Shown: positions 42,101 through 48,100 of the stretch, in pieces
Layout: the number at the start of each line of letters is the position of its first letter
How positions within the stretch are numbered: position 1 is the stretch's first letter
NCBI GenBank assembly: GCA_965202585.1
Contig: CBDBBG010000278.1
Location: 1 to 64,000 of the forward strand
Source: Thalia democratica
Taxonomy: Eukaryota
Length of the DNA: 64,000 nt
Reading direction: 5' to 3'
Made by a program: the position numbers and the translations under genes
Notes under the pieces: model-generated
What the model was told of the DNA's origin: nothing
Databases searched by the model: none
What the model saw: only the letters and a program-made list of their open reading frames with translations

Positions 42101-45100
42101 TAAAAAGTATACTACAAATAATATATAAATTTTTGCGTTAAGAAATAACTAACTTTAATTAAACAAAAACAAGCATCATTGAAAAAGTTAAACAAAACCT
42201 TTTGCACATTTTTAAACACGTTATGTAAAGATACAAGAGTTATACGGGTTGAAAAACTCATGAAAAATTCACCTATAAATAAGAAAAAAATGATTTCAAA
42301 AAACACGATATCAATTAAACTAAAGTATAGCATGACGTAGAAGTGTAAAAAGATAATATTTTAGTTAAAAAAACTTTAATCATAAGAACATACCATGGTT
42401 TAACACATTGATTGTTAAACATGCTGATAAAAAATTAAACCGACTATGACGTCACAGTGTACCGGTGCGACGAGGAGGACGGGTGGCTGTCGTGGAAGGA
42501 CCACTGCTACTACCTGTCCCCGCAGAACGTGTACAAGAACTGGCACGACGCCAGGCAGGCGTGCCAGCAGCTAGGTGGCGACATCGTGAGCATTGGGAGC
42601 AAGGGGGAGAACGACTTCATCGAGTCCCAGATATGGCAAGCCCGTTAGTTGTTGATGTTTACTTTCTTATTTGCTATACTAGGGAAGCATCTTTTTTGGG
42701 ACTTTTTAAAGTTTTCTAACGAACAATATTGTTTAATCTAACATTAGTTTTGGAAATTATAAGAAAAATATCTTTAGTTAACATAAATTTTTTAATACAA
42801 ACAATTTTATGACTTTTATTGGAAAGTAACATTACCGAATTAGTAAATAAAAGTACAAAAGTATTGACTTGATACTGTTTAGTATGGTTTAAAATTGTAA
42901 ATAAACATTTATAAACATTATTCATAACATAATTTCAATCGTAACTTTTAACTAATAAACATTTTTAATCAGGCGACAAAGGAGACGTATGGATAGGACT
43001 AACAGACAGCGAAACACAAAACTACTACCAATGGGCCGACGGTTTGCCAGTAACATACACTAAATGGTCTTTCAACGAGCCTAATGGCGGGGTCAGTAGT
43101 TGTTTTTTAAAATAATTAGTACAATAATATTTATGAATTTTATTAAAACCATTTTATAAGCTTTAAAATTAATTAAATAGTAAACGAACAAATATAATTA
43201 TTTCTCTAAAAGTAAACAACAAAATACGTTATATTAAATTACCAAAAATCCTATACCAAGTCCACATACCAAATTGTAGCAAGGTTTTTTTATAATTTTA
43301 ATTTTTTAACACAACCTTATTTAGTTAACAGCATAAAAGCTAACTAATACTCAAAGCATGTATAAGCTTGGCACTTTACGAGCTTTTTACTTTTATTACT
43401 TTTTTTAAAAGAAATATATTACTCCAGGAAAAACAACAAATTATGCTTAAGTTAAATACAATTAACAATGTGTAGCAAACTTCTTTTTTTATTTCTAAGT
43501 GATTAAATATAAGCTTAGTTACTTAATTTAAGCTACCTAAGTTAAACAAAGAAAACCTACTATTTAAAGTTACCCACTGCACTTTAGCACCATAACTCCT
43601 TAATTTTAAAGTTAAAATTTTTTCATGTAATAATACCAATATTCCAGGAAGAACGTTGCGTTCAGTTCATCAGGTTGGAGGGCTACTGGAACGACCTGCC
43701 TTGCACTGACGTCATCAGCTACATGTGCAAGAAGGAGAAACAGCTGATGAATAAGGTGCCGGAGGGCAACGAGCCCGTCGACGAGGGGTGCGACCCCGGG
43801 TGGACCGCTTACGGTTTGTGACGTCATAGTATTAATAGTTTAAAGGAGTGGTGTACTCTAGTTGAAAAAGACACCTTGCATTTGACGTCATAAAACTAAA
43901 AGTGACTTTTAACTATGCATAACACTTAATTTTTTTTTTGCAAATTAAATTTATATTTTAGAATTTATTTAATCCAGAGCCAGATAAGTGTAAAAATATC
44001 GCAAAAGTAAAAAAAAAGTTTTGAAAGTTAATAACAACTTTGATGTCTAAAAGTAGTCGTTTAATACTGTTTAAAAGCGTATTAACTGACACGACTTAGC
44101 AAATAATCACTTAAAAATCTACCGCACAGAATCATCATGCTACAAAGTGAGCGACGACAAGCTGATATGGTTGTACGGCGAGGAACTGTGTGAGGAAAGC
44201 AACGCTCACCTCGTAAGCATCCACGATTCGTACGAACAAGCGTTTGTGCACTCACTCGTTAGTATATTGATACTGTTTTATTTGACGTTAAAAAAGTATT
44301 AGCTAAGTATAAATCGGCTGAGTAAGATGTTGAATGCTTTGCTTTTTGTTTAAATAGTTTAACATAAAGCTTACCTATGTCCAACAGTAATGGAATTTAG
44401 CATACAGAATTTGAAAAACACATGAAAGTGGGTTGGCTAAAGTAGACAATTTTGATTGTATAATTTTTTATGTTAGCAAGTTGTAATAGTAAGTGATAAA
44501 AGGTTGCATCAAAACAGTTGAAAAATAAGATTTCAAAGAGATATTTAAAATCAATGCGCAAGAAAGGAGAAAATGAGATCATTTATTTTTAGAGTTTGTT
44601 TCAAAAAATTAGCTGGTGTACTAACATTAAGTAACTTTCTTCTACAAACCGTAATGTTCTTCTAACCACATAATACAACAGGTAGCAACAAAGCTCCCAC
44701 CAGGGCTCAATTACTCCGCATACATCGGATTGTCGGGCCACATCAACGAAGACGGTCAGTTGTACTACAGATGGACCACCGACGAAGCTGTTACCTACAC
44801 GCAATGGAGCCCTGGTTCACCTGGTTGGTTTGTTAACATGTGCATTAGGTCATTTTTATAAAAAGTTATAACTGATGTGATGAGCCAGTTACTTACAAAC
44901 AGTGGAACCCTGGTTAACTAGTTTTGTTTATTAACATGTTTATTAATAAGTCGTTTTTATAAAACTTATAAGTGATGTACTACAATTTTTTTTGTATGAA
45001 TTTACACTTATTAGATCTTTTATCAAAATATTTCTAAGAAATAAGTTAAGAGAAACAAAGTTGATAAATCAGCATATAAAAGATATTAATTTACCACATT

Positions 45101-48100
45101 TTTATATACAAAAACAATATAACAGTAAATTGCAAACAAAGCAAGTTTTATCTGTAACTCAAAACAAACACTACTTAGTTTGTAAACAACTTTTTTATAA
45201 AATATCCTAACACAATATACAAATACAGTCAAGTTTGAAAGAGCAATACAGAGAATTATTGAACAGCTATCATATTTGTTTCAAGCTTAAATTAATAAAA
45301 AAGTATCATTTTCTAACTCTCTATACTCAACAGACACGAAATACAAATGTGCGTTTCCGTTTAATTACCGCGGGAAGACATACTACGAGTGCATAGACGA
45401 TCTTCCCACACCTGCAGGTCAGGACCACTCCTGGTGCTCCATAACAACCGACTTTAGCAACAAGTGGATCAACTGCGACAGGGACTCGGAGTGGGACTGC
45501 ATCACGTTGGACCCATTCACAGGTGTGATGTCATAATGATTTTGTTATGTTATATTGTATTGTTGTAATAGTGTTGTGTTGCTTGGTTTAACTAGAAGTT
45601 AATTATATGTCGTGTCACAATTCTAATTTTTTATCTAGAGTGTTTGAATTTATATTCACAGGGTATAATTTTTACAATAAAATTCTGAATGGACTAACAA
45701 GAGTTTAAAACAAATTAGACCAGTTTATTATATCAAAAATGTTTTGTATTACAGTTTAAAAGGTTAAGATTTTTTAGTAGGATGATAATATTAAGTTCAA
45801 TAAGTATGCTATATTCTAAACAACTTTTTCTGATTTATTTTTATTTTTAAGCAAATAAAATTTTTACATACTTATATACAACAAATGTTAACTATATGGT
45901 ATGAATAAGAAAAGATTTAATTATATATCTTTTTGATAGTATTTAAAATACGTAACTCATTCAAAACAAATACACAGGAAATTGGAACAGTGGAATATGC
46001 GGTACAGATTGGTATTACGTTTGCGAGAAACCGCGTATAGGATACTCCCAACCAACATACACCACTCCAGATCCTTCTATTGCATGCGCTAACGGATGGG
46101 ATTCAGACCCTACGTTGTCTTATTGTTACAGGGTATGTAAAGTAAACATGTGTGAACATCAGTTATCTGACGCTAATTTATACACACAGAGATAGTTACT
46201 ATTATTCTAATTGAGTTAAAATATAATAGATGGCTAATTTTTTATTCAAGTATTTTAAACGAATTAAAAAATAAAAACCATATTGAACTACATGCTGACA
46301 GAAGTATGTGTGAAGAATATACGTTCTGTAAAAATCCTCATACAACTTTATTTAATAATTTATAAGTCATACCGTTTATAATCCATTAAAAGAAGGATCA
46401 AACAGAAAAAATTAAGAATAAAATATTAAGATTACAAATCATACAATCAACAGGTGGAAGAAGCGATCAGCGAGGACCAGCGCAGGACTTGGCAGGAGTC
46501 TGTGGATTACTGCAGAGGGTTGGGAGGTGACCTGGTGTCGATACACAGCAGTGAGGAGAACAACGCGCTTGTGAACATCGTGCAAAAGAGAACTAGTAAC
46601 AGTAACGTGTACTTCTGGATTGGGCTGAACAATATAAATGCGCAAGACGGATACGATTGGTCCGATGGTGAGATACTGTTGCTTTTTAATGGTTTAATTG
46701 TTTTGATTACATGTTAAACGTAAGTAAAAAATTTAAAGTCAAAACTGTTTTTATCTTTTTTAAATGAGATGTTGTGTATAATAATGTTATATACAAATTA
46801 AAAAAAAAGTTTAAGTAAACGTTTAAAAATTTAGTGATTTTTGTTGAAAATACAATTTTAAAAGTGGAGTTTTGGTATTTAGCTTAGTTATTATTTTTAA
46901 TAGATAGTAATGTTTAGTGCTAAAAAATGTTACAGAGAACAACTCGTTAAATTAACTTTTTTTATTTCGTCGTCTCTAAGATTATCATTCTTAATTACAT
47001 ACAAAATATTTAAGTTTAACCTTGGTATTTTACTTACTGGTAGTGTTGCTTCTAACTTAGTACTTTTAATTATAAATAGGCACACCAAGTGATTTTACAA
47101 ATTGGGCAACTGGCGAGCCAAACAACGTCGATGGAATCGAAAATTGCATAGAAGGACAATTCTACACAAACACTGATGCGTAAGTCATTATGTATTATAC
47201 TAACTTAACAAAAAAAAACATTACGGACAATACAAACTAAATAAGGTGCTTAATTTTGCAATCTATATAAAAAAAATTTAGATTGATGTTTTTAAACTCC
47301 ATTACAGATGATAAGACTAAAAAATCCTTTCTTTATAAATACAAAATTTACAATAAGAATTTAGATACTAAGTGAGCAAATAAGCCATAAATATTAAATT
47401 AAATTGAGTAAAACAAAAACCTATTTTTTGCAGATGGAACGACATATACTGCGACGCGAAGAGAAACACGATTTGTAAGATTGCTAAAGGGAAAACCCCT
47501 TCTGAAGTACCAACTCTGCCCCCACAAAAAGGAGATATTTCAACTGAGTGCGGCACTGATAACACATGGGTATGTTTACTTTCAATCATAAAATTAAGAA
47601 AAAAGTACAGAACTTTACTGGTATTATAGTGTTAAAATACTCTTAGATGTCTCATTAATAATTAAAAAGGTTCTACTACAAATTCTTCTATTTTTATATT
47701 TAGTAATATTAGATATATTGTAAAGATTTACAGGTAGTTTACACTACAAAATATCAATATTCTAACTAGCGTAAATTTATTTAGCTCATTTCCTTCTCAC
47801 TTATTTACTACATGTTACTTTTTATCGTTTTTTTGTTTTTATTGTAGATCTAATTTTCATTTTTTTCAAATTTCAACAGGTCCGCTACAAGTCCTCATAC
47901 GGTACGGAGAAGTGCTACTTGTTCCAGGACTCTTCATCCAAGATGACTTGGAACAACGCAAACGATCAGTGCAGATCGCTAGGTGGTGCTTTTATAAATA
48001 TTAAATTGTTTATTTCTATTTAAATAAATAAATAAACTTAAAAGCAAGTTTTATTCTACAAAACACAGCTCTTCTGGGAAAGAGCAAATGAAAAATATTT

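What the first reader, a model, noticed from the sequence alone, without database searches (positions are those of the whole stretch)
44682..46030. Fibronectin type II domain inserted into the long loop of a C-type lectin domain
CTLD7 runs ..[23 protein letters not shown], then a full FN2 ([20 protein letters not shown]), then resumes [32 protein letters not shown]. The FN2 sits where the EPN sugar-binding loop would be, and this CTLD has lost EPN and WND. In vertebrate mannose-receptor proteins the collagen-binding FN2 lies in tandem before CTLD1. Here the sugar site appears replaced by a putative collagen/gelatin-binding module. The 5' boundary is a phase-1 intron; the 3' boundary is fused within the exon. 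This is the second nested domain in the same protein.
Basis: partly seen in the sequence, partly recalled or inferred. Interest (0 to 1): 0.72.

Follow-up and report, generated by a model that had tools for sequence, protein, structure and literature searches.

The report
Fibronectin-II module nested in lectin domain
One lectin-type domain of a very large membrane protein of a marine animal carries a complete fibronectin type II module in the loop that normally binds sugar; several related genomes keep this layout under selection and I found no paper describing it, but what it binds is untested.

Summary
Exon 45334-45522 encodes a full Pfam fn2 domain (43.5 bits, cut-off 22.2). The same exon then encodes the beta3 strand and conserved cysteine of the seventh C-type lectin-like domain (CTLD7). 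The rest of CTLD7 lies in exons 44130-44257, 44682-44823 and 45978-46132. Against sister CTLDs 6 and 8, the FN2 is a 47-49-residue insert between the EPN position and the E-x-C of beta3. EPN and WND are lost.

The layout is conserved. Three further loci in the same genome and three contigs from other marine assemblies keep the same exons, phases and nine cysteines, with no indel. A diverged second copy of the gene differs in exon B at eight sites, all third codon positions. No RNA data were available, and the spliced domain could not be folded whole.

The collagen-binding reading is only partly supported. The aromatic pocket is kept, but the Arg/Asp pair essential in Endo180 is absent.

FN2 nested in a host domain is already known from IGF2R domain 13 and MMP-2/9. 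A CTLD host appears undescribed, so this is a new variant of a known kind.

This scan noted the same stretch once before (s1-287176).

The parts
43648..43813 (+). Exon holding the end of CTLD6 ([24 protein letters not shown]), the linker and the first cysteine (C0, ..[10 protein letters not shown]) of CTLD7. Its donor is in phase 1.
   Evidence: Pfam Lectin_C matches positions 80-107 on this piece.
44130..44257 (+). CTLD7 exon 1, 128 nt: [42 protein letters not shown] (C0', alpha1 with cysteine C1, alpha2).
   Evidence: Splice junctions. Pfam Lectin_C positions 4-32, 20.2 bits on this piece alone. The length is 128 nt in five of the six loci (134 nt in L005).
44682..44823 (+). CTLD7 exon 2, 142 nt: [38 protein letters not shown]. 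It carries the WIGL-type motif (YIGL) and the long loop up to the EPN position, which here reads GSP. It ends in phase 1.
   Evidence: Eight of its nine differences from the chromosome C4 copy are at codon position 3.
44879..44945 (+). Decayed copy, inside the intron, of the 3' end of exon 2 plus its donor site. It is 75% identical to 44781-44847, lies 98 nt downstream and has a stop at the former splice site. It is not part of the protein.
   Evidence: repeat family D1.
45334..45522 (+). Exon B, 189 nt, phase 1-1. It encodes the whole FN2 module plus the beta3 strand of CTLD7.
   Evidence: It is 189 nt in all six loci. All eight differences from the C4 copy are at codon position 3 and the protein is identical.
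45348..45476 (+). FN2 domain proper, from first to last cysteine ([31 protein letters not shown]). Cysteine spacing is 13/14/12.
   Evidence: Pfam fn2 positions 1-42 of 42, 43.5 bits. The same range was found by the whole-genome scan. The AlphaFold2 model has mean pLDDT of 76-89 in four of its first five ten-residue blocks and 59 in the C2-C3 loop block. All 50 best Foldseek PDB matches are FN2 modules.
45477..45522 (+). The return into CTLD7: [15 protein letters not shown]. This is a 7-residue linker, then the beta3 strand with conserved CTLD cysteine C2.
   Evidence: Alignment with CTLD6 and CTLD8. The cysteine is invariant in six loci.
45978..46132 (+). Exon [19 protein letters not shown] (to about 46033) is the WND position (here WNS), beta4, cysteines C3 and C4, and beta5. 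The linker and the first cysteines of CTLD8 follow.

Best explanation
**What it is (shown).** CTLD7 of a very large multi-domain type I membrane protein is a real composite domain that is always spliced this way. The protein has about a dozen CTLDs (counted by eye from the ORF list), F5/8-type-C, kringle, LCCL and trefoil modules, and a transmembrane helix. A complete fibronectin type II module is spliced into the last loop of the CTLD7 long-loop region. It lies between the EPN position and the Glu-x-Cys that starts beta3, which is the face where a classical C-type lectin holds calcium and sugar.

**Sugar site (shown).** The calcium and sugar ligands are gone: GSP replaces EPN and WNS replaces WND. 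CTLD7 is therefore a scaffold, not a lectin.

**Geometry.** The FN2 is tied in by two short linkers of fixed length, 5 and 7 residues (shown). That should hold it in one orientation on top of the CTLD (inferred).

**Origin (inferred).** A phase 1-1 FN2 module entered an intron that several sister CTLDs also have in this loop. The intron between the FN2 and beta3 was then lost. This happened before the gene duplicated and before the species examined diverged.

**Function (inferred, about 40% within this explanation).** The conserved aromatic depression of the FN2 replaces the sugar site as a binding site for a non-glycan ligand. The ligand is most likely an extended, proline-rich or collagen-like polypeptide.
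For: **Domain identity**
- Full-length Pfam fn2 match.
- FN2 fold: the AlphaFold2 model has mean pLDDT of 76-89 in four of the first five ten-residue blocks (59 in the C2-C3 loop), and the 50 best PDB matches are all FN2 modules.
- Against CTLD6 and CTLD8 of the same gene, the FN2 is a single 47-49-residue insert.

**Exon B cannot be optional.** It carries beta3 and cysteine C2 of the CTLD.

**Conservation**
- Six loci keep the layout: the window, paralogues L003 and L005, ENA contigs L011 and L012, and TARA Oceans scaffold L013.
- The exon lengths 128/142/189 nt recur in five of the six loci. Paralogue L005 has 134/148 nt for the first two exons. Exon B is 189 nt in all six.
- Phases and splice sites are the same, and all nine cysteines are invariant.
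- There is no indel in the FN2 or its linkers.
- The FN2 is as conserved (50% mean pairwise identity) as the CTLD flanks (50% and 44%).

**Selection**
- The chromosome C4 copy differs from the window at 32 sites in the four exons. Of these, 29 are at codon position 3.
- In exon B, 8 of 8 differences are at position 3 and the protein is identical.
- The introns differ at 11% of sites, plus indels.
- Every detectable paralogue of the preceding CTLD7 exon is paired with the FN2 exon.

**Co-folding of the four exon pieces as separate chains, with exon B as the partner**
- Score 0.47, best of 3 controls 0.03: weak support by the tool's own verdict.
- The mark was reached by 51 of 78 solved complexes and 2 of 108 mismatched pairs.
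- At 0.60 or under it was reached by only 5 of those 78 solved complexes and by all 4 of the mismatches that passed, out of 180.
- The runs agree in at least 55% of contacts, and the partner's pLDDT is at least 63.
- This job is unlike the tool's calibration set.

**Pocket residues.** The aromatic residues are kept: Tyr at C1+6, Phe/Tyr at C3+6, Trp at C4-3.
Against: - No RNA evidence. No RNA run holds the stretch, and the two runs laid on it are genomic contigs.
- The whole spliced domain could not be folded, because no reference exists for a spliced product.
- The co-folding result is weak by the tool's own standard.
- For the functional part, the Arg206/Asp208 pair is absent from all three paralogues of this genome. 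Its loss abolishes gelatin binding in Endo180 (PMC4635314). Only L011 and L013 have a comparable pair.
- The C2-C3 loop is 14 residues, against 9-11 in most FN2 modules sampled.
- L013 has Arg in place of the Tyr193 equivalent.
- The conserved aromatic residues are also the structural core of any FN2, so keeping them does not prove a ligand site.
Confidence: 0.6

Rival explanations
1. The nested FN2 is an internal brace, as in IGF2R domain 13. It binds no outside ligand. Instead it contacts a neighbouring repeat (CTLD6 or CTLD8) and fixes the shape of the receptor, or supports binding by that neighbour.
For: - In IGF2R the FN2 is inserted between beta8 and beta9 of repeat 13 of a 15-repeat endocytic lectin-type receptor. 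It works by touching domain 11, not by binding collagen (PMC7015683). IGF2R is among the fold matches.
- The window's FN2 lacks the Arg/Asp collagen determinants.
- The fixed linker lengths and the well-conserved CTLD7-CTLD8 linker (60% mean identity) fit a rigid inter-domain arrangement.
Against: - Nothing here shows a contact with a neighbouring domain.
- The C2-C3 loop, the most exposed part of the FN2, varies freely between orthologues. That is not what a fixed interface would suggest.
Confidence: 0.25
2. The FN2 binds a small cationic or lipid head group, such as phosphorylcholine, as in the seminal-plasma BSP/PDC-109 proteins. CTLD7 would then be a membrane- or lipid-sensing head.
For: - PDC-109 is the best Foldseek match and the second-best sequence match among solved structures.
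- The window's FN2 shares its short C3-C4 spacing of 12 residues and its lack of the GR-DG motif.
Against: The similarity is modest (34% identity over 44 columns). The choline-binding residues are the same aromatic core that every FN2 has. I recall their numbering from memory and did not check it here.
Confidence: 0.1
3. The nesting is an artefact. The FN2 exon would be a pseudo-exon, a mis-assembly, or part of another transcript, and CTLD7 would be made without it.
For: No RNA evidence was obtainable. The exon is symmetric (phase 1-1, 189 nt), so skipping it would keep the reading frame.
Against: - Skipping it removes beta3 and a conserved cysteine, leaving an odd cysteine count.
- The same exon, with the same length and phases, occurs in six loci from independent assemblies.
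- All 8 allelic or paralogous differences in it are at third codon positions.
- A genomic contig with no differences from the window runs from within exon B (45485) across the whole B-C intron into exon C, and other contigs cover exon A and the start of the A-B intron.
Confidence: 0.03

Closest known systems
IGF2R / cation-independent mannose-6-phosphate receptor, domain 13 (PDB 2v5o, 6um2)
   Same: A single FN2 module is inserted into a loop of one repeat of a long, many-repeat, lectin-type, type I endocytic receptor (PMC7015683). The FN2 fold matches the model here (rmsd 1.7 A over 47 columns).
   Different: The host fold is an MRH (P-type lectin) repeat, with the insert between beta8 and beta9, not a CTLD. 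The two proteins share no overall homology. In IGF2R the FN2 supports a neighbouring domain. Its role here is unknown.
Gelatinases MMP-2 and MMP-9 (PDB 1ck7, 1l6j)
   Same: FN2 modules are nested inside another domain, and they bind gelatin through an aromatic depression. MMP-9 is the best sequence match among solved structures.
   Different: Three tandem FN2 modules sit in a protease catalytic domain. Here one FN2 sits in a lectin-type domain. The gelatinase modules carry the GR-DG loop, which is missing here.
Mannose-receptor family: MRC1, Endo180/uPARAP, PLA2R, DEC-205 (PDB 5ao5, 5xts, 7qsr)
   Same: A type I membrane protein with many CTLDs and one FN2. In Endo180 the FN2 and CTLD1 form one rigid collagen-binding unit (PMC4635314).
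   Different: - In that family the FN2 stands in tandem between a ricin-type domain and CTLD1. Here it lies inside CTLD7.
- No ricin-type domain was found in the window.
- The protein here also carries F5/8-type-C, kringle, LCCL and trefoil modules.
- The Arg/Asp collagen determinants are absent.

Membership tests
Fibronectin type II domain (Pfam PF00040) | Profile match above the curated cut-off, over the whole domain | tested here: met
   43.5 bits against 22.2, profile positions 1-42 of 42. The whole-genome scan found the same range.
Fibronectin type II domain (Pfam PF00040) | Four cysteines (pairing 1-3 and 2-4) and the conserved FPF..Y, WC and W..C core | tested here: met
   The sequence shows all four cysteines and the core, and all are invariant in six loci. 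The disulfide pairing itself cannot be tested here.
Fibronectin type II domain (Pfam PF00040) | FN2 fold: two small perpendicular two-stranded sheets | tested here: met
   The AlphaFold2 model built with a 72-sequence alignment has four short strands. Mean pLDDT of its ten-residue blocks is 76-89 over the FN2, except 59 in the C2-C3 loop block. The top 50 Foldseek PDB matches are all FN2 modules, probability 0.93-1.00, though E-values are weak (0.0035 and above) for so small a domain.
Collagen/gelatin-binding FN2, by the Endo180 criteria of PMC4635314 | Tyr193, Tyr219 and Trp225 equivalents (the aromatic trench) | tested here: met
   Mapped by offset from the cysteines: Tyr at C1+6, Phe at C3+6 and Trp at C4-3 in the window. 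All are aromatic in 5-6 of the 6 loci.
Collagen/gelatin-binding FN2, by the Endo180 criteria of PMC4635314 | Arg206/Asp208 salt bridge in the C2-C3 loop. Mutating it abolishes gelatin binding, and DEC-205 lacks it. | tested here: not met
   The window has Ala and Gln at C3-7 and C3-5, with no Arg in the loop. L003 and L005 lack the pair as well. L011 (Arg/Asp) and L013 (Arg/Glu) have it.
C-type lectin-like domain (Pfam PF00059) | CTLD core: WIGL-type motif, cysteines C1-C4 and C2-C3, and long-form C0-C0' | tested here: met
   Once the FN2 is set aside, the domain aligns end to end with CTLD6 and CTLD8 of the same gene, and all six cysteines are in place. Pfam sees only pieces, because the exons had to be scanned separately (20.2 bits on the first exon).
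Calcium-dependent carbohydrate-recognition domain (the sugar-binding subset of CTLDs) | EPN or QPD motif together with WND (calcium site 2) | tested here: not met
   The window reads GSP and WNS. Orthologues read xQP, DEP or EMP, and WNS, WNV, WGI, WKV or WNT. None has both motifs.
Mannose-receptor family (MRC1, MRC2, PLA2R1, LY75) | N-terminal ricin-type (CysR) domain followed by FN2, ahead of CTLD1 | tested here: not met
   No Ricin_B_lectin match lies in the window or beside any FN2 match in the genome. The only FN2 in the window is the nested one. The scan works exon by exon, so a weak or split ricin domain could be missed.
Mannose-receptor family (MRC1, MRC2, PLA2R1, LY75) | 8-10 tandem CTLDs, one transmembrane helix, a short tail, and no other module types | tested here: not met
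   CTLD-type exons run on the + strand from about 24.4 to 54.7 kb, and a transmembrane stretch lies near 56.1 kb. The gene also carries F5/8-type-C, kringle, LCCL and trefoil modules.
IGF2R-type nested FN2 | The host domain is an MRH (mannose-6-phosphate receptor homology) repeat | tested here: not met
   The host here is a CTLD. The resemblance is one of design, not descent.

The most novel reading that the evidence does not exclude
The FN2 and the sugar-blind CTLD7 together form one rigid head that binds collagen or matrix polypeptide. It would be built by nesting rather than by tandem packing, and so would be convergent with the FN2-CTLD1 trench of Endo180 and the mannose receptor. It would serve matrix or particle uptake in a planktonic lineage. 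In this lineage's genome I found no ricin-type domain next to any FN2 match, so no gene of the canonical mannose-receptor type was detected.
Probability: 0.2. Interest if true: 0.7.

Novelty: new variant of a known kind. Interest (0 to 1): 0.52.

Why it matters
- **A natural example of loop replacement in the CTLD fold.** The long-loop region is the part evolution usually re-tunes residue by residue. Here the whole site is replaced by an independently folding module, and the result has been kept for a long time.
- **A third host fold for FN2.** MMP catalytic domains and the IGF2R MRH repeat were the two known hosts. A CTLD adds a third, which argues that FN2 is unusually fit for nesting.
- **A pattern in this genome.** The same gene has a kringle between F5/8-type-C exons. 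Other notes of this scan report a vWA domain inside an EGF domain and an ILEI module inside a MAM domain in this genome. Nesting may be a recurrent route to new extracellular proteins in this lineage.
- **Protein engineering.** The fixed 5- and 7-residue linkers give a tested recipe for grafting a small disulfide-rich module onto a CTLD scaffold.

Tried and rejected
1. **RNA evidence.** The look-up of sequencing runs listed no RNA run. The two runs laid on the stretch are genomic contigs of one polymorphic sample and say nothing about splicing.
2. **Folding the whole spliced CTLD7.** Not done. As a substitute I co-folded the four exon pieces as separate chains, which gave only weak support.
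3. **First fold of exon B.** With a 7-sequence alignment the mean pLDDT was 50.6, too low to use. I repeated it with 72 sequences.
4. **Search for an annotated full-length protein with this layout.**
   - phmmer of exon B against 1.84 billion representatives gave 337 hits, of which 150 are listed.
   - Only four single-exon ORF fragments (P0052, P0065, P0107, P0141) continue from the FN2 into the CTLD strand.
   - A regular expression and a home-made profile of the composite domain found no full-length protein among the 150.
   - An independent FN2-in-CTLD with an unrelated FN2 sequence would not be found this way.
5. **ESM Atlas look-up of exon B.** It returned only generic FN2 clusters.
6. 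**Identity of the animal.**
   - Earlier notes call it a salp or pelagic tunicate.
   - I looked for a GH6 domain, which among animals I recall only from tunicates. Nothing rang, not even in the control genomes, so this is uninformative.
   - The accession numbers of the other assemblies appear in no paper in the library.
7. **Literature.** Three searches found no paper describing FN2 inside a CTLD. The library holds open-access papers only. A search for the PDC-109 choline-binding residues found nothing.
8. **Origin of the insert.** I considered that it re-used exactly the same intron as CTLD6. CTLD6 and CTLD10 have a phase-0 intron in this loop and CTLD9 a phase-1 intron a few residues away. 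"Same loop" is supported, but "same intron" is not.

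
Full report
**1. What is in the sequence**

The window is 72% A+T, with short G+C-richer exons on the + strand from about 24.4 kb to 56.4 kb. The exons in question have canonical ag/gt boundaries:
- 44130-44257 (enters in phase 1, ends in phase 0)
- 44682-44823 (ends in phase 1)
- 45334-45522 (189 nt, phase 1 at both ends)
- 45978-46132 (ends in phase 0)

The order is a CTLD start..[23 protein letters not shown], a four-cysteine module [31 protein letters not shown], then [16 protein letters not shown], and [18 protein letters not shown].

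Exon 45334-45522 on its own matches Pfam fn2 over the whole profile (1-42 of 42), at 43.5 bits against a cut-off of 22.2. The neighbouring exons give partial Lectin_C matches.

**2. Where the insert sits**

I aligned CTLD7 with CTLD6 and CTLD8 of the same gene. The FN2 appears as one gap-free block of 47-49 residues. It lies between the EPN position (NEPN and GEPN in the sisters, GSP in CTLD7) and the Glu-x-Cys that begins beta3. This is the last loop of the long-loop region, flanked in classical C-type lectins by ligands of calcium site 2.
- CTLD7 reads GSP for EPN and WNS for WND, so the sugar site is gone.
- All six CTLD cysteines are present.
- The FN2 is tied in by 5 residues before its first cysteine and 7 after its last.

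**3. It is not an accident of this assembly**

In the same 802-Mb genome, exon B has several copies:
- an identical-protein copy on chromosome-scale contig C4;
- a paralogue on C6 (62% identity);
- two copies on C2 (43% identity, in inverted orientation).

Each paralogue examined (L003, L005) has the same four exons around it.

A HMMER scan of 1.84 billion representative proteins found four small ORF fragments in which an FN2 runs on into the CTLD strand. Three of their contigs could be read: two ENA assemblies (L011, L012) and a TARA Oceans metagenome scaffold (L013). All three show the same gene, with CTLD6, the split CTLD7 and CTLD8 in order. L013 has introns of only 56-95 nt.

Across the six loci:
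- The exon lengths are 128/142/189 nt in five loci. L005 has 134/148/189.
- The intron phases are the same.
- All nine cysteines in the aligned region are invariant.
- There is no indel anywhere in the FN2 or its linkers.
- The FN2 is as conserved (50% mean pairwise identity) as the CTLD parts (50% and 44%).

Every detectable paralogue of the preceding CTLD7 exon is paired with the FN2 exon. The insertion therefore predates the duplications and the species splits.

**4. Selection**

The C4 copy is only 88% identical to the window over 2.9 kb. Mismatch runs at 11% in the introns, plus indels, and 4.7% in the exons.

In the four CTLD7 exons there are 32 differences, and 29 fall on third codon positions. 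In exon B, 8 of 8 do so and the protein is unchanged. By chance that is (1/3)^8, about 1.5e-4, for exon B alone. The exon is therefore read in this frame and is under constraint.

**5. Is it spliced as modelled?**

No RNA run holds the stretch. The two runs laid on it are genomic contigs. They confirm the genomic continuity and the high polymorphism, but say nothing about splicing.

The case rests on comparative evidence and on logic. Exon B carries beta3 and cysteine C2 of the CTLD. Skipping it would keep the reading frame but would wreck the domain.

I could not fold the spliced domain, because no reference exists for it. As a substitute I co-folded the four exon products as separate chains, with exon B as the scored partner:
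- The score was 0.47 and the best of 3 controls was 0.03. The tool's verdict is weak support.
- The mark was reached by 51 of 78 solved complexes and 2 of 108 mismatched pairs.
- At 0.60 or under it was reached by only 5 of those 78 solved complexes and by all 4 of the mismatches that passed, out of 180.
- The runs agree in at least 55% of contacts, and the partner's pLDDT is at least 63.
- This job is unlike the tool's calibration set.

**6. The FN2 itself**

With a 72-sequence alignment, AlphaFold2 gives four short strands. Mean pLDDT of the ten-residue blocks is 76-89 over the FN2. It drops to 59 in the block holding the C2-C3 loop and falls below 50 for the orphan beta3 tail.

The 50 best Foldseek matches in the PDB are all FN2 modules: PDC-109, factor XII, SEL1L, MMP-2/9, IGF2R domain 13, mannose receptor, Endo180, PLA2R and fibronectin. 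The probability is 0.93-1.00, though the E-values are weak for so small a domain. The best sequence matches among solved structures are MMP-9, PDC-109, MMP-2 and fibronectin.

The nested clade has its own signature: cysteine spacing 13/14/12 in six of the seven sequences compared (P0107 has 16 in the middle). Its C2-C3 loop is therefore longer than the 9-11 residues of most FN2 modules sampled.

**7. What it may do**

Endo180 mutagenesis names Tyr193, the Arg206/Asp208 pair and Tyr219 as essential for gelatin binding. DEC-205 lacks Tyr193, Arg206 and Asp208 and does not take up collagen (PMC4635314).

I mapped these positions by their offsets from the cysteines. The disulfides are 187-213 and 201-228 in that paper.
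- The window has Tyr, Phe and Trp at the aromatic positions.
- It has Ala and Gln at the Arg/Asp positions.
- Only L011 and L013 carry an Arg plus an acidic residue there.

The aromatic depression is thus kept, but one experimentally critical determinant is missing from all three paralogues of this genome. Collagen or gelatin binding is possible but not indicated.

The same paper shows that in Endo180 the FN2 and CTLD1 form one rigid unit whose trench spans both domains. That makes a fixed FN2-on-CTLD head a reasonable design.

The alternative precedent is IGF2R. There an FN2 inserted between beta8 and beta9 of repeat 13 works by bracing domain 11 (PMC7015683).

My ranking:
- ligand site for an extended polypeptide: about 0.4;
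- brace: about 0.25;
- choline or lipid head-group site: about 0.1;
- the rest unknown.

**8. Context and family**

The gene also has F5/8-type-C, kringle, LCCL and trefoil modules and a transmembrane stretch. The nested FN2 is the only FN2 in the window. No ricin-type domain lies in the window or next to any FN2 match in the genome. It is therefore not a member of the mannose-receptor family, though it resembles one in being a many-CTLD membrane protein with one FN2.

**9. Origin (inference)**

Sister CTLDs 6, 9 and 10 have an intron in the same loop, in phase 0 or 1. From general knowledge, FN2 modules are classic phase 1-1 shuffling units. The simplest history is insertion of an FN2 exon into a loop intron, followed by loss of the intron on its 3' side.

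**10. Novelty**

Nested FN2 is known in MMP-2/9 and IGF2R. I found no paper and no annotated protein among the 150 best hits with FN2 inside a CTLD. I rate it a new variant of a known kind, of moderate interest.

The animal is said in earlier notes of this scan to be a salp or pelagic tunicate. I could not check that. The TARA Oceans origin of one orthologue fits a planktonic animal.

Noticed in passing
window 44879-44945, compared with 44781-44847: The intron after exon A holds a decayed direct copy (75% identity, 98 nt downstream) of the exon's last 43 nt plus its donor site and the first 24 nt of the intron. It has a stop codon at the former splice point. This is the same kind of 'exon-edge echo' that other notes of this scan describe elsewhere in this genome.
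   Followed up: partly
window 43836-47021, compared with G000:C4:71696836-71700021 (L001): The window's contig (C287) has a second copy on chromosome-scale contig C4 that is only 88% identical over 2.9 kb. The exons differ almost only at third codon positions. It is either a very diverged haplotype assembled separately or a recent duplicate. In the public runs laid here, the window's own version has low depth (about 2-6) and a version 3-5% different has depth 40-60.
   Followed up: partly
window 38382-40792: Two kringle exons (38795-38974 and 39303-39497; Pfam Kringle, 34.9 and 52.3 bits) lie between exons that look like the start and the end of an F5/8-type-C domain. I did not analyse it.
   Followed up: no
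G000:C2:23270492-23270674 (+) and G000:C2:23392029-23392211 (-), loci L005 and L004: Two copies of the most distant paralogue lie about 120 kb apart in opposite orientation and are 86-92% identical. This is either an inverted duplication or two haplotypes placed on one contig.
   Followed up: no
L013 (TARA Oceans scaffold, 4021 nt): An orthologue from an ocean metagenome has the same domains in the same order over its 4 kb: the end of an F5/8-type-C domain, LCCL, CTLD6, split CTLD7, CTLD8 and CTLD9. Its introns are only 56-95 nt. It comes from an unidentified planktonic animal with a much more compact genome.
   Followed up: partly
whole genome G000: The genome has at least 38 FN2 matches and 9 ricin-B matches, but none of the ricin matches lies near an FN2 match. 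No gene with the CysR-FN2 start of the vertebrate mannose-receptor family was seen. The scan works exon by exon, so this is weak evidence.
   Followed up: no
window 55132-55311 and 56023-56370: A trefoil (P-type) domain (33.3 bits) lies just before the transmembrane stretch of the same gene. This is an unusual partner for a many-CTLD receptor.
   Followed up: no
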